64,000 bases of DNA, from NCBI GenBank assembly GCA_053919585.1, contig CM132819.1. One strand, given 5' to 3'. The notes beneath the pieces were generated by a model. It was not told the origin of the DNA. It ran no database searches and was given only the letters and a program-made list of their open reading frames with translations. Source of the stretch: Euprymna scolopes. Lineage: Eukaryota. Positions within the stretch are counted from its first letter, which is position 1. Every line of letters starts with the position of its first letter. This document shows, one piece after another, positions 11,532-63,893 of this stretch. Position numbers and translations under genes: made by a program.

Positions 11532-11667
11532 ATCAATAATACATGATGAAAAAATATAAATTAATCGTTAAAAGCGTTGTTTATCAATTAGTTCTAAATG
11601 ACAGTATTCGGAAATTGAAGGTCCAATCCGTATTAGAGGTTATAAAAAGATGTATAATATTAATTAA
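11532..11667 (+). repeat. 136-bp segment duplicated in inverted orientation at 16223-16358
   Basis: Ungapped alignment with 5 mismatches counted by eye. Confidence 0.92.
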
Positions 11668-12396
11668 CAATGTTAACCAATAATGGCGGATGGAATGGAA
11701 ACAATCTACCGCCATTGGTCAAATTAAAAGTTCTATTCGAAATTCCATACTTATTCCCACATTCGACATATGAATTCCAGAGTTTAAAGGATGAACCTGA
11801 AGAATGTTAGAGATTACAATAGCCGAAAGATTTTGAATATAAAAAAGATTAAAATAGTCTGAAATCTCCAAAACAATACATAGAAAATTTTATTTCTATC
11901 TAATATCCTCGGTGTCATAACTATACCCCACAATATTATCCAAGAAAAAAATGAATAGATGGCAACAAATTTTGATTTCATGTGAGAGAGAAATCGTTGA
12001 TTAAATTGTGTAAGCTATTACATATTAGGTTAGTTGCTGTGTTTAAAAAAAACTCAGAAGAAAAGCTTTTTAAAATGTCCCCCAACATGTTTTCGGAAAA
12101 TTTAAAGAGTGACATGAGGAATTTAGTGGTTGAAAAATTTTTTTTCGAATCCATTAGATGAAGAACTTCAGAATTGTGCAATTCTGCAAACGGACGAAAC
12201 AAGAAAATCTAGACTGATAAATTCTTTAGATGCTTGATCAGGACAGACTGACAATAGTTTTGAAGCTGAGGGGCAGGGGAAATGCGGAGATTGCAGGGTA
12301 GGGGGAGGAACACAGAAAGCCGAAACCTGGGGAAGTCAGAGCTCTGCATGATTAGAGTTATCCTTTCACTATCTGTGACTGAAGTCTTTTACAAAT

Positions 12397-15961: not shown

Positions 15962-16037
<76 letters not shown>

Positions 16038-16163
16038 ACTACTTAATTTACTCAAATAAAATTAATATACGAAAGTATAGATTTATGCGTAAACTTTATT
16101 TACTTCAAAAGTGCTCAATACGTAGGTAGAGCTAGTTAGTAAGTTATAAATGTATATGACGAT

Positions 16164-16216
16164 TAAGCTACACTGAATATTTCGCATTTCATCCACTCTA
16201 GAATTCTTCAGGCTTA
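16164..16216 (-). ncRNA. Type I hammerhead ribozyme (family B), left arm of an inverted pair
   Basis: Minus strand reads TAAGC CTGAAGA ATTC-TAGAGT-GGAT GAAA TGCGAAATATTCAGTG TA GCTTA. Confidence 0.8.
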
Positions 16217-16357
16217 TAATTTTTAATTAATATTATACATCTTTTTATAACCTCTAATACGGATTGGACCTTCAATTGCCGAATACTGTCATTTAGAACT
16301 CATTGATAAACAACGCTTTTAATGATTAAGTTATATTTTTTCATCATGTATTAATGA

Positions 16358-16410
16358 TAAGCCTGAAGAATCCTAGAGCAGATGAAACGCGGAATATTCA
16401 ATGTAGCTTA
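16358..16410 (+). ncRNA. Type I hammerhead ribozyme (family B), right arm of an inverted pair
   Basis: TAAGC CTGAAGA ATCC-TAGAGC-AGAT GAAA CGCGGAATATTCAATG TA GCTTA; core intact, some stem mismatches. Confidence 0.75.
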
Positions 16411-16464
16411 ATCGCTATATACATTTCATAACTTACTATATATATATATATTCACACAAGTAAA

Positions 16465-16564
16465 CGGTGACTTGTTTCGGGGTTCGAATCATGCTAGTAA
16501 TTTAGTTGGTTATTTCTACACTGATGATTTTACAAAGATGAAACTCACACACATATATGTCTGT
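16465..16564 (+). mobile_element. B-box plus hammerhead element (family C)
   Basis: GGGGTTCGAATC B box at about 16478, then CTACA CTGATGA TTTTACAAAGAT GAAA CTCACACACATATATG TC TGT. Confidence 0.6.
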
Positions 16565-61280: not shown

Positions 61281-63545
61281 TCTATTTACTCCCTTATTCT
61301 TTCAAGCACATTAGTAGGTATTCCACCATGTGATCCCATAGTATCACAAAGGTAACAACAGTTTGATAACCTCAATACATGTCCAGGCTTTAGGAGCACC
61401 TTATATATGAGAGTGTACATTGAGCTATCAAATGTTACAACAGTGTTGTTGAGGATAAGCTCGATATTCAAAAGGATCTCAAAGACTTGGATGTTTAGAT
61501 AAGATTTTTTTGTTTGACAATCAGGCAGTGCCCAATCAAACATTTGCTACTGCTCAGACCTTAGTCCAATTGCCTCCACTAGTTATAAGCCAATGCTGGC
61601 AAAAGTTGCTAGTGACAGGTCTTGCTTGGGTAGGGAGAAAAAAATTCTAGATAATCTGGCCGAGACGCAGAGGGGAGAGTTGAATGTTGACTCAGCCAGA
61701 TGGTGGTGACAGTCGGAGGAAACAAAGAAAGATAAACATTAGAAAACCTGTCTTCCTAAAAACTTGCGTCCGGGTAGTGGTGGTGAAAGGTATATTGTAG
61801 GAATAGCCATACATGAGTAAGGGTCTTCTGTACGCAAGATATTTGTATGTTTCAACTGAAGTAACTTTATGATTGGCTGGAAATTAGATATCATTTACAT
61901 TGATAAATGGAAACCGTTCAACTCTGAATATACTTCATTAAATCCTATTAGTAAATTATGCAACATTTTCTTTAGTAATTGAATAACATGTGCTATTATT
62001 TTTATTTATTTTTTTTTGCTTTTTTAATTCTTCATGGCTATTGCTTTAATGTCTTGAGTGATGATCAAACGACCTAAAACATAATTTTCTTGTTGATTGT
62101 TGCACGTTCAAAAAAGAGAAGCGTGCAACATATTAAGGAGATAGTGATTTATATCTAACGCTGGCTCTTTTGTTAGCAAATAAGTAAAGAAAACTTACAA
62201 AGAGAGTGAGAGCTATTTCTCTTAGCTGTTTTTTAAAAGATGTTTATTTAAAAATATCTCCATATTAGCAAACTGCTAAACCAGATTAAGTATTTTTAAA
62301 TAAATTGTAGCAGAGGACATTATTTTGATGCGAGTGCCATGATATAGCAATAACAATTGAAACTTCGCTAAACAAAAGTTTTATTTCTAAGAATAAATGT
62401 TATTTAGTTTCAAATTTTCAAATCCGGATAAGAATTTTATATTTGCTATTATCATGGAAATTATTTAGTACTTAAGGAATGAAATTAGGTTTGCCTGCGT
62501 GCTGTAGATTAAATAACAGTATATATGAAACTACATACTCATATCTAACTGTTTTGTTCTACATACTAGAGAAATAGAGGGGAAAATGTCACCAAGTTAA
62601 TGCCCTTCAACCATCAAAATGAGGAAAATGACAGCATTTTGTTGATCGCTGTCCTGTTTGGCTCCCTCCCACGTTGTCATATAACGGCCCTTGCAAAGCT
62701 CTAAAGCGGGAAAAAATGACTTATGTTTGGCTTTTTATGTTTTTATTTTCTCTTGGTCTCTGTGAGCGTTCTGTTAGTCTGCTGCAGTCATTTATTATAT
62801 TTTTTTATTGTGTTTTGCTTTTAGGTGTGTAAAATGTCAGAACGAGCCAGCGAGAAGGATCCTATTTCAAGAGGGGTTACCCTATGTTGCTTTAGATCGA
62901 CTGTGTCCTACACTTCACCCCCATCTGTCCTGACTGCAAGAATGACCTTTTAGCAGGTAGGAAGGAAAAAGGTCTGCTTAGTTGGGTGATCAGGAACCGG
63001 GCGATGACAGTAATAGTGTGCCGCTTTGGGCTTTCTGCACACACACATAAATAGTATTCCCACTTAGAGAACAGTCATAAAAAACGCTGCAGACAATAAT
63101 ATCATCCTACCATGCTGAAGTCTAAATAACTTTGTAAATACTATATATATAACCCCAATTTTTACACATTGTTTGAATAATTGTGTGCGGAGGAGTTACT
63201 GTAATTAGCTGTATCTACCTGATGCAGCCCCGATACAATAAATTCGTTAGTTTTTAACTCATTTGCATATTATAAAAACCGATAGAGAAAAAGGAAGGCA
63301 ATTTGTTTGCAATAAAATACGAATAATTTCCTTTATAAATTGAAACTTTTAGGTTATACTTAAAAATGATTACCGCTATTCCTATTACATATATATATCA
63401 CTTCTAGTTTTACCTTAATTTATGGGCATGTTTATTCCCGTATATATATATATGATCGTTCAATGTATGGCAATCCTTAATTTACATACTTCTCACTATC
63501 TGTTAATTTCCTTAAATTAATGAAACAAACATTTGTGTAACTTAC

Positions 63546-63598
<53 letters not shown>

Positions 63599-63612
63599 AT
63601 ATATATGGCGAT

Positions 63613-63666
63613 TAAGCTACACTGAATATTCTGCGTTTCATCCAACTATAGGATTCGTCAGGCTTA
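63613..63666 (-). ncRNA. Type I hammerhead ribozyme (family B), intact core
   Basis: Minus strand reads TAAGC CTGACGA ATCC-TATAGTT-GGAT GAAA CGCAGAATATTCAGTG TA GCTTA; stems I, II and III all pair. Confidence 0.88.
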
Positions 63667-63893
63667 TGCGCGAATTCTGTGGTTGCTTCTTGTTTTTATA
63701 TATGTTGAGGATTTCTAGTTAGCCAATCAGCTTTCTAGTATCCACCTCGCCCCTTCCTATCAGCCAATGGGCATGCATTTTATCAAACAAAGGATCTGTT
63801 TTAGAACTAGGTTAGTGCTTTTAGGTAGACGTTCTCTTTTTTTCCTTTTTTTTACATATAAATATACCTATGTGTACACACATACATGCACAT

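What the first reader, a model, noticed from the sequence alone, without database searches (positions are those of the whole stretch)
16137..16438. Back-to-back hammerhead pair enclosing a segment copied from elsewhere in the same intron
Seen: what looks like a MITE has inverted arms that are each a family B hammerhead, pointing outward on opposite strands. The 136-bp interior (16223-16358) is an inverted ~96% copy of 11532-11667. The family B copy at 63613 has unrelated sequence next to it, so the ribozyme module appears portable. Known: Penelope-like elements have hammerhead-bearing pseudo-LTRs that can be inverted. Inference: this is either a ribozyme cassette that captured local DNA by template switching, or a bidirectional element in which transcripts from either strand get a ribozyme-defined 3' end.
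Basis: partly seen in the sequence, partly recalled or inferred. Interest (0 to 1): 0.85.

Follow-up and report, generated by a model that had tools for sequence, protein, structure and literature searches.

The report
Inverted hammerhead retroposon pair with borrowed filler
This is not a MITE but one copy of a roughly 10,000-copy hammerhead-carrying retroposon that always inserts into TA microsatellites as two copies joined head to head; this copy is unusual only because 140 bases copied from 4.6 kb away in the same gene fill the gap between the two halves.

Summary
The sequence facts hold. Two inverted arms (16137-16217 minus, 16357-16436 plus) each carry an outward-pointing type I hammerhead motif. 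The stretch 16219-16358 is an inverted, ungapped 95.7% copy of 11532-11671, and the 5.9-Gb genome holds only these two near-identical copies.

The interpretation mostly fails.
- **Boundaries.** The element runs from 16038 to 16436. It includes a 99-nt one-sided "tail" and lies between (TA)n tracts.
- **Family.** All 24 sampled relatives have the layout (TA)n, arm, centre, arm, about 104-nt tail, (TA)n. The genome has at least 6,408 exact back-to-back pairs and 9,085 arm-tail junctions.
- **Published match.** Head-to-head 5'-truncated copies, a tail at one end and a (TA)n target are the described scar of Penelope-like retroelements.
- **The 63613 copy.** The sequence next to its ribozyme is the family's normal body, so the ribozyme is not a portable cassette.

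The foreign centre is genuine local capture, rare but not unique. The two arms belong to different sublineages. I infer that two separately made cDNAs were bridged by synthesis on a nearby template, either DNA or Eph pre-mRNA.

The hammerhead core is strongly conserved across copies, but no Rfam model matches it and RNA reads show no cleavage ends. Earlier notes of this scan (s1-280695, s1-247316) describe hammerhead elements inserted as inverted pairs elsewhere in this genome.

The parts
15964..16037 (.). Left (TA)n microsatellite, the target of the insertion
   Evidence: Read directly. In all 24 family copies examined a (TA)n tract follows the tail.
16038..16136 (-). One-sided tail of the element. 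It is about 104 nt in the family; this copy has a 4-nt deletion and one substitution.
   Evidence: Alignment of 24 tails. 9,085 exact arm-tail junctions occur genome-wide. RNA reads show the 4-nt TAAG difference at 16096.
16137..16217 (-). Left arm, next to the tail: the 3' 81 nt of the family B unit with a hammerhead motif. Core CUGAAGA and GAAA; stem II AUUC/GGAU; stem III AUGC/GUGU. Predicted cut between 16169 and 16168 on the minus strand.
   Evidence: Its nearest relative is an arm in L004 (2 differences), not its partner arm (10 differences).
16218..16356 (.). Foreign centre (filler). 16219-16358 is an inverted 95.7% copy of 11532-11671. One extra A sits at 16218, and 2 nt (AT) overlap with the right arm.
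16357..16436 (+). Right arm, without tail: hammerhead motif of a weaker subfamily variant, with stems II and III reduced to 3 bp by C.A mismatches. Predicted cut after A16405.
   Evidence: Its nearest relative is an arm in L006 (3 differences).
16437..16451 (.). Right (TA)n remnant of the target microsatellite
11532..11671 (+). Donor of the filler. It spans the edge of an old dispersed repeat plus about 35 nt of locus-specific sequence.
   Evidence: Old-repeat homology continues to about 11874, beyond the copied piece. The first ~35 nt are not shared with the old repeat copies.
63598..63667 (-). Hammerhead of a full-length family B unit, used as the reference for the family's normal body
   Evidence: Its minimum-energy fold is the three-way hammerhead junction.

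Best explanation
The feature is one insertion (16038-16436) of an abundant non-coding, hammerhead-bearing retroposon ('family B'). The family lands in (TA)n microsatellites as two 5'-truncated copies joined head to head, with 3' ends outward and a constant tail at only one end. That architecture is the one published for Penelope-like elements, whose protein cuts and extends both DNA strands and starts reverse transcription at two internal sites.

In most copies the two halves meet directly, usually at the short palindrome GCGC, or within their own body sequence. In this copy the two halves come from different sublineages of the family. They were joined through a 140-nt stretch synthesised on a template 4.6 kb away in the same Eph-receptor gene, with 0-2 nt of microhomology at the joints.

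Shown: the family architecture, the copy numbers, the donor and its direction, and the lineage mismatch of the arms. Inferred: that the filler was taken up during the insertion itself, and whether the template was DNA or nascent pre-mRNA. The hammerhead motif is a conserved part of the family, but nothing shows that this palindromic copy cleaves.
For: - Architecture. In 24 of 24 copies found with a query that did not include the tail, one flank is (TA)n and the other is the same ~104-nt tail followed by (TA)n.
- Centres. They vary from 0 to 201 nt and are normally 5'-truncated family body, often symmetric about short palindromes such as GCGC or TTTTAAAA. Both outer ends stay intact, as expected from two syntheses converging from outside.
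- Copy numbers. 6,408 exact pairs have a 0-30 nt centre, against 3 for the control pattern. 276 have a 121-150 nt centre, against 0. 9,085 exact arm-tail junctions exist. Only 649 tails are preceded by a base other than the arm's last A.
- Literature. Penelope-like insertions have an inverted 5'-truncated copy, a tail at one end and a (TA)n bias (PMC8557442). The purified protein cleaves and extends both strands, and its two internal start sites define the tail (PMC11167929).
- Donor. Only two near-identical copies exist in the genome. The homology is a discrete 140 nt. The donor locus carries the wider old-repeat context.
- Arms. Each has 5 derived states and they share none. Eight other copies with 5 or more derived states per arm share 2-7.
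- Age. The tail has 1 substitution and 1 indel in ~100 nt. This copy therefore looks young, which is compatible with 6 differences in 140 nt between filler and donor.
- Hammerhead. Core columns deviate in 0.56 copies per column of 74, against 4-5 for stems and loops and 17 for the free position N7. 92% of stem cells pair, against 26-37% when partners are shifted.
Against: - No autonomous Penelope-like element with the same 3' end was sought, so 'Penelope-mobilised' rests on architecture alone.
- The tail is ~104 nt, not the published 30-40 nt.
- The timing of the filler is not fixed. A later break at the palindrome centre could give the same picture.
- Public reads do not independently confirm the filler allele. 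One run of uncertain type (X1) covers the right flank at depth ~5 but shows no depth on the filler. Word searches found only 2 of 12 sampled words in low-coverage runs.
- Rfam hammerhead models do not match.
- The arm sample is biased at columns 11-19 for 15 loci that were chosen by an anchor pattern.
Confidence: 0.6

Rival explanations
1. Later repair. An ordinary short-form pair (arm-GCGC-arm) was already here. Its palindromic centre broke, and the break was mended with a templated insertion copied from DNA 4.6 kb away by microhomology-mediated, synthesis-dependent end joining.
For: - Both arms are complete exactly to the usual boundary, as if only the 4-nt centre had been lost.
- The joints have 0-2 nt of microhomology plus one extra base.
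- Long palindromes are known to be fragile (general knowledge).
- Filler-donor divergence of 4.3% does not exclude a later date.
Against: - The two arms share none of their 5+5 derived states. Arms of ordinary diverged pairs share 2-7. The starting element would therefore already have been atypical.
Confidence: 0.2
2. One reading: a MITE-like DNA element, or a portable ribozyme cassette, with hammerhead-bearing terminal inverted repeats that picked up local DNA.
For: - The arms are inverted, and a TA dinucleotide flanks each arm at 16137-16138 and 16437-16438.
- The interior is local.
Against: - The true element is asymmetric, with a 99-nt tail on one side only, here and in 24 of 24 relatives.
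- The TA 'duplication' on the right cannot be told from the (TA)n target. On the left the TA lies inside the arm, next to the tail rather than next to flanking DNA.
- Centres are variable 5' truncations of a retroposon body.
- Single copies with full body and the same 3' end exist in L023, L024, L026 and at 63.6 kb.
Confidence: 0.03
3. One reading: a bidirectional element in which transcripts from either strand are trimmed at their 3' end by the outward-facing hammerhead.
For: - Both arms keep the catalytic core and the GUA cut site.
- The family as a whole conserves the core.
Against: - Any RNA holding both arms is predicted to form a long arm-against-arm hairpin of -127 kcal/mol, z = -12.5.
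- Neither arm alone adopts the hammerhead fold as its minimum-energy structure.
- Three polyA RNA runs show no preferred molecule ends and no reads on the filler.
Confidence: 0.05
4. Two unrelated insertions, at different times, on either side of a 140-bp segment that already lay between two (TA)n tracts. Alternatively, an assembly artefact inside a palindrome.
For: - The arms come from different sublineages.
- Some pairs keep (TA)n between the arms.
- Run X1 shows no depth on the filler.
Against: - Both arms stop at exactly the family's usual inner boundary, and the pair obeys the one-tail rule.
- No (TA)n lies between the arms and the filler.
- A mis-join would be 100% identical to its source, not 95.7%.
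Confidence: 0.1

Closest known systems
Penelope-like element insertion structures and their non-autonomous derivatives (Evgen'ev & Arkhipova 2005; Craig et al. 2021, PMC8557442; Frangieh et al. 2024, PMC11167929)
   Same: An inverted 5'-truncated copy joined head to head, an extension ('tail') at only one end, a strong (TA)n / AT-rich target bias, and a hammerhead motif in the repeated part.
   Different: - There is no reading frame, so the element is non-autonomous.
- The tail is ~104 nt rather than 30-40 nt.
- Exactly one tail was seen in every sampled pair.
- No autonomous partner was identified here.
- This copy has a foreign centre.
Animal non-LTR retrozymes and Schistosoma Sm-alpha type hammerhead SINEs (Cervera & de la Pena 2020, PMC7229834; bioRxiv 10.64898/2026.07.22.740005)
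   Same: A short non-coding mobile unit with a type I hammerhead and a high copy number. Mussel hammerheads likewise lack most of the conserved nucleotides of the archetypical tertiary contacts.
   Different: Retrozymes are head-to-tail tandem repeats that can release circular RNA. This copy is an inverted pair with no second ribozyme in the same orientation, so it cannot release a unit-length RNA.
Filler DNA and templated insertions at retroelement 5' junctions and double-strand-break repair sites
   Same: A discrete stretch copied from a nearby template, with joints of 0-2 nt microhomology plus one untemplated base.
   Different: At 140 nt it is long for end-joining filler. It sits at the meeting point of two converging retroposon halves.
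MITEs of the Tc1/mariner (Stowaway-like) type
   Same: Small size, inverted arms and flanking TA.
   Different: The true termini are asymmetric, the centre is variable, the 3' end is retroposon-like, and the target is a microsatellite.

Membership tests
Hammerhead ribozyme, type I | Conserved core CUGANGA ... GAAA and a UH cleavage site | tested here: met
   Both arms and the 63613 copy have CUGA[A/C]GA, GAAA and GUA followed by G. Among 74 arms the core columns deviate in 0.56 copies per column, against 17 for N7.
Hammerhead ribozyme, type I | Three helices around the core, kept by base pairing | tested here: inconclusive
   In the family 92% of stem cells pair, against 26-37% with shifted partners, and changes are mostly wobble-compatible. 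The 63613 copy folds to the junction by minimum energy, but the family consensus and both window arms do not, and z-scores are weak. Position 10.1-11.1 is A-U or G.U; by general knowledge G-C is the usual pair there.
Hammerhead ribozyme, type I | Match to a curated Rfam hammerhead covariance model | tested here: not met
   No hammerhead hit at gathering score in the 64-kb window. None at E<=10 in 1-kb, 0.7-kb or 86-nt searches.
Hammerhead ribozyme, type I | Self-cleavage | tested here: inconclusive
   Three polyA RNA-seq runs show no place where many molecules begin or end. Such libraries do not preserve cleavage ends well.
Penelope-like (PLE-type) insertion, non-autonomous | Inverted 5'-truncated copy joined head to head | tested here: met
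   There are at least 6,408 pairs with short centres.
Penelope-like (PLE-type) insertion, non-autonomous | Tail extension present at one end only | tested here: met
   24 of 24 sampled pairs and 9,085 arm-tail junctions. The length is ~104 nt, against the published 30-40 nt.
Penelope-like (PLE-type) insertion, non-autonomous | Insertion bias for (TA)n / AT-rich DNA | tested here: met
   (TA)n lies on both outer sides in nearly all sampled copies.
Penelope-like (PLE-type) insertion, non-autonomous | Shares its 3' end with an autonomous PLE (RT plus GIY-YIG endonuclease) of the same genome | not tested
   No search for the autonomous partner was made.
MITE (Tc1/mariner-like) | Terminal inverted repeats at the true ends of the element, plus a target-site duplication | tested here: not met
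   The element extends 99 nt beyond the left arm, as the one-sided tail, so its true ends are not inverted repeats. The TA on the right cannot be told from the (TA)n target.
Animal non-LTR retrozyme | Head-to-tail tandem units, each with a hammerhead, able to release unit-length or circular RNA | tested here: not met
   This copy and the sampled pairs are inverted, not tandem. Earlier notes of this scan report tandem families elsewhere in the genome; that was not tested here.

The most novel reading that the evidence does not exclude
The filler was reverse-transcribed from the host's own nascent Eph pre-mRNA. The cDNA primed on the minus strand at the right (TA)n ran off the 5' end of its retroposon template, switched at an AT microhomology onto intron RNA made 4.6 kb away, copied 140 nt, and was then joined to the opposite cDNA. 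If so, the foreign centres of these pairs would be a natural record of Penelope-type reverse transcriptase switching onto local host transcripts. In the 121-150 nt size class about 8% of the listed pairs carry such a centre, which scales to roughly 20 genome-wide. This would also be a route for copying intron sequence in cis.
Probability: 0.2. Interest if true: 0.55.

Novelty: new member of a known kind. Interest (0 to 1): 0.3.

Why it matters
The finding looked like a new kind of mobile ribozyme cassette.

Three modest points remain useful.
- The family gives thousands of natural examples of the poorly understood two-strand, two-start-site insertion mechanism of Penelope-like elements. Every sampled pair has exactly one tail.
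- Rare pairs with foreign centres, such as this one, record what the insertion machinery or the repair machinery copies when the two halves fail to meet. Across many copies this could show whether the template is RNA or DNA.
- The family is a hammerhead variant that the curated Rfam models miss, although its core is clearly conserved.

Tried and rejected
- **Rfam.** Searches at gathering score and at E<=10, in 64-kb, 1-kb, 0.7-kb and 86-nt stretches, gave no hammerhead hit.
- **MITE reading.** Rejected once the flanks of 24 relatives showed the one-sided tail.
- **Simple snap-back (hairpin) origin for this copy.** Rejected because the centre is not palindromic and the arms share no derived states.
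- **Dating the filler against the arms.** I first thought the arms (12% apart) were older than the filler (4%). The arm differences turned out to be sublineage markers shared with other loci, and the tail has only 1 substitution. The age argument therefore does not separate capture at insertion from later repair.
- **Polarising the filler-donor differences.** Using old-repeat copies as outgroups was uninformative.
- **Excess of transversions as a sign of an error-prone polymerase.** The filler has 5 transversions among 6 differences, but 68% of singleton changes in the arms are also transversions, p = 0.38.
- **A second 'local capture'.** The centre of L049 matches a site 1.2 kb away at 84%, but it is a piece of a repeat with at least 1,589 candidate matches, some of them closer, so it is not local.
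- **Independent read support for the filler allele.** Inconclusive.
- **Exons between the two sites.** Four minus-strand reading frames between 11.7 and 16.1 kb, picked by GC content, had no Pfam match.

Full report
**1. What is in the sequence**

The two arms are real. The repeat finder gives 16148-16221 against 16353-16426 at 88% complementarity. BLAST extends them to 16137-16221 on the minus strand and 16353-16438 on the plus strand.

Read outward, each arm has the order:
- a stem I strand (AUAAGC);
- CUGAAGA;
- a short hairpin;
- GAAA;
- a second hairpin;
- GUA, followed by GCUUAAU, which pairs back to the first strand.

That is the layout of a type I hammerhead. The predicted cuts are after A16405 on the plus strand and between 16169 and 16168 on the minus strand.

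The interior is an inverted copy of an upstream stretch. Positions 16219-16358 match 11532-11671 over 140 nt with six mismatches and no gaps. Nothing else within about 2 kb of either site is shared.

**2. The interior is a local copy, and the 11.5-kb site is the donor**

A whole-genome search with the interior found 26 candidates, and all were scored. Two are near-identical: this one and the one 4.6 kb away. The other 24 are 75-88% alike, so they are copies of an old dispersed repeat.

At the 11.5-kb locus, homology to those old copies continues to about 11874, well beyond the copied piece. The first ~35 nt of the copied piece are locus-specific rather than part of the old repeat. The element's interior was therefore copied from this particular locus, not the reverse.

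**3. It is not a MITE**

A genome search with the 302 bases returned more than 3,596 first-look candidates for the arms.

In 24 sampled copies the arms are always arranged minus then plus, with 3' ends outward. The flanks are not symmetric:
- one side is (TA)n;
- the other side is always the same ~104-nt sequence, beginning ACTAGCTCTACC and ending AAGTAGTT, and only then (TA)n.

In the window this tail is 16038-16136. The element therefore really spans 16038-16436 and sits inside a (TA)n tract, 15964-16037 on the left and 16437-16451 on the right.

The centres range from 0 to 201 nt. They normally consist of family body sequence truncated from its 5' side and joined head to head, often symmetrically at a short palindrome such as GCGC or TTTTAAAA. 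The outer ends are always intact, and all variation is at the centre.

Pattern counts give the scale:

| Pattern | Count | Control |
|---|---|---|
| Exact back-to-back pairs, centre 0-30 nt (mostly GCGC) | 6,408 | 3 |
| Exact back-to-back pairs, centre 121-150 nt | 276 | 0 |
| Exact arm-tail junctions | 9,085 | 0 |
| Tails preceded by a base other than the arm's final A | 649 | 0 |

**4. The 63613 copy**

On its sense (minus) strand, the sequence upstream of this ribozyme reads ...CAACCACAGAATTCGCGC, preceded by ...GGTGGATACTAGAAAGCTGATTGGCTAAC. This is the same body found next to the ribozyme in the single copies L023, L024 and L026, and in the long centres of the pairs.

It is a full-length family B unit, not evidence for a portable ribozyme module. 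What the window's pair lacks is that body.

**5. Comparison with published biology**

Craig et al. 2021 (PMC8557442) describe Penelope-like insertions as follows:
- they are highly 5'-truncated;
- they often have an inverted 5'-truncated copy immediately adjacent;
- a 30-40 bp tail is often present at only one end;
- some clades have a (TA)n insertion bias;
- hammerhead motifs lie in the repeated part of canonical clades.

Frangieh et al. 2024 (PMC11167929) showed that a purified Penelope-like protein cleaves and extends both DNA strands. It starts reverse transcription at two internal sites of the RNA, and the sequence between those sites is the tail.

The family here shows all four architectural marks. 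Two syntheses converging from the two ends of a broken (TA)n tract would explain the intact outer ends, the variable centres and the one-sided tail.

I did not look for the autonomous partner. The tail here is three times longer than published. Membership therefore rests on architecture.

Earlier notes of this scan (s1-280695, s1-247316) describe hammerhead-tailed elements inserted as inverted pairs elsewhere in this genome.

**6. Why this copy differs**

About 4 of the 50 listed pairs in the 121-150 nt class have foreign centres. Another three keep (TA)n in the centre. A foreign centre is therefore rare but not unique.

The one other foreign centre I could examine (L049) is a fragment of a repeat with at least 1,589 candidate matches, not a local copy.

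The window's arms are odd in a second way. Each has five derived states relative to the family consensus, and they share none. Eight other pairs with five or more derived states per arm share two to seven. Each window arm also has a closer relative at another locus (2 and 3 differences) than its own partner (10 differences).

The tail has only one substitution and one 4-nt deletion. The copy therefore looks young, and the arm differences are inherited sublineage markers rather than decay.

Together this suggests that the two halves were made from two different template RNAs and were bridged by a 140-nt filler. The joints show a 2-nt AT overlap on one side and a single extra A on the other.

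**7. DNA or RNA template**

The host gene is an Eph receptor on the minus strand. Its ligand-binding exon lies 11.7 kb beyond the window's end, and its transmembrane exon lies 21 kb before the window's start.

The orientation allows an RNA route. A cDNA primed on the minus strand at the right (TA)n, after finishing the right arm, could continue on Eph pre-mRNA and would produce exactly the observed strand and direction.

A DNA template fits equally well. The orientation match is worth a factor of two at most.

A later break at the palindrome centre, repaired by templated insertion, also remains possible. The unmatched arms argue against its simple form.

**8. Is the hammerhead real?**

For:
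- Among 74 distinct arms the nine core columns deviate from the consensus in 0.56 copies per column. Stems, loops and the 3' part deviate in 4-5 copies per column, and the free position N7 in 17.
- 92% of stem cells pair, against 26-37% when partners are shifted.
- Differences between sublineages fall on N7 and the two loops.
- The 63613 copy folds to the three-way junction by minimum energy.

Against:
- No Rfam hammerhead model matches at any threshold tried.
- The first pair of stem II is A-U or G.U, whereas by general knowledge G-C is the usual pair.
- The family consensus and both window arms prefer other folds, and the z-scores are weak.
- Fifteen of the loci were chosen with an anchor covering columns 11-19. 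The six core columns outside the anchor still average 0.67.

For this copy specifically:
- The whole element is predicted to fold into a long arm-against-arm hairpin of -127 kcal/mol, z = -12.5.
- Three polyA RNA runs show reads from family members on the tail and arms.
- Those runs show no reads on the filler and no preferred molecule ends.

The idea of ribozyme-defined 3' ends on both strands has no support.

**9. Verdict**

This is a new member of a known kind, with a modestly interesting filler. Independent read support for the filler allele could not be obtained.

Noticed in passing
L003-L030 and window 16038-16436: Every one of 24 sampled head-to-head pairs has exactly one tail, never two and never none. 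The query used to find them did not include the tail. If the two reverse-transcription start sites were chosen at random on each strand, this would not be expected.
   Followed up: partly
family alignment, loop III columns 47-50, equivalent to window 16393-16396 in the right arm: The middle of the 10-nt loop of stem III (AAUA, with a near-invariant U after it) is as conserved as the catalytic core: 0 deviations in 74 arms across four columns and 1 in the next. It may serve in a tertiary contact or as a protein-binding site.
   Followed up: no
L049:1510-1642: Another back-to-back pair has a 133-nt foreign centre, of which 115 nt come from a different repeat family with at least 1,589 candidate matches (best 89%). 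This could be a switch onto an abundant RNA or a nested fragment.
   Followed up: partly
window 16148/16400 joint and 16448 loose end: In RNA run X24, 152 reads join 16148 to 16400, and 243 reads leave at 16448 into one specific sequence (agreement 0.97). Some other, rearranged family copy seems to be part of a well-expressed transcript.
   Followed up: no
window 16234-16338: Run X1 (contigs; RNA or DNA uncertain) covers the unique right flank 16465-16560 at depth ~5 with no differences, but shows no depth on the filler. This could be a coverage hole or a polymorphism.
   Followed up: no
window 63540-63870, minus strand: A full-length family B unit lies between (TC)n(TA)n and (TA)n tracts, in the sense orientation of the Eph pre-mRNA. 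Its hammerhead is the best-folding copy seen.
   Followed up: partly
G000 C4:103195338-103195476 and C8:32001926-32002065: Some pairs keep (TA)n microsatellite between the two inward-facing, 5'-truncated halves, as if the two strand insertions had been resolved separately.
   Followed up: no
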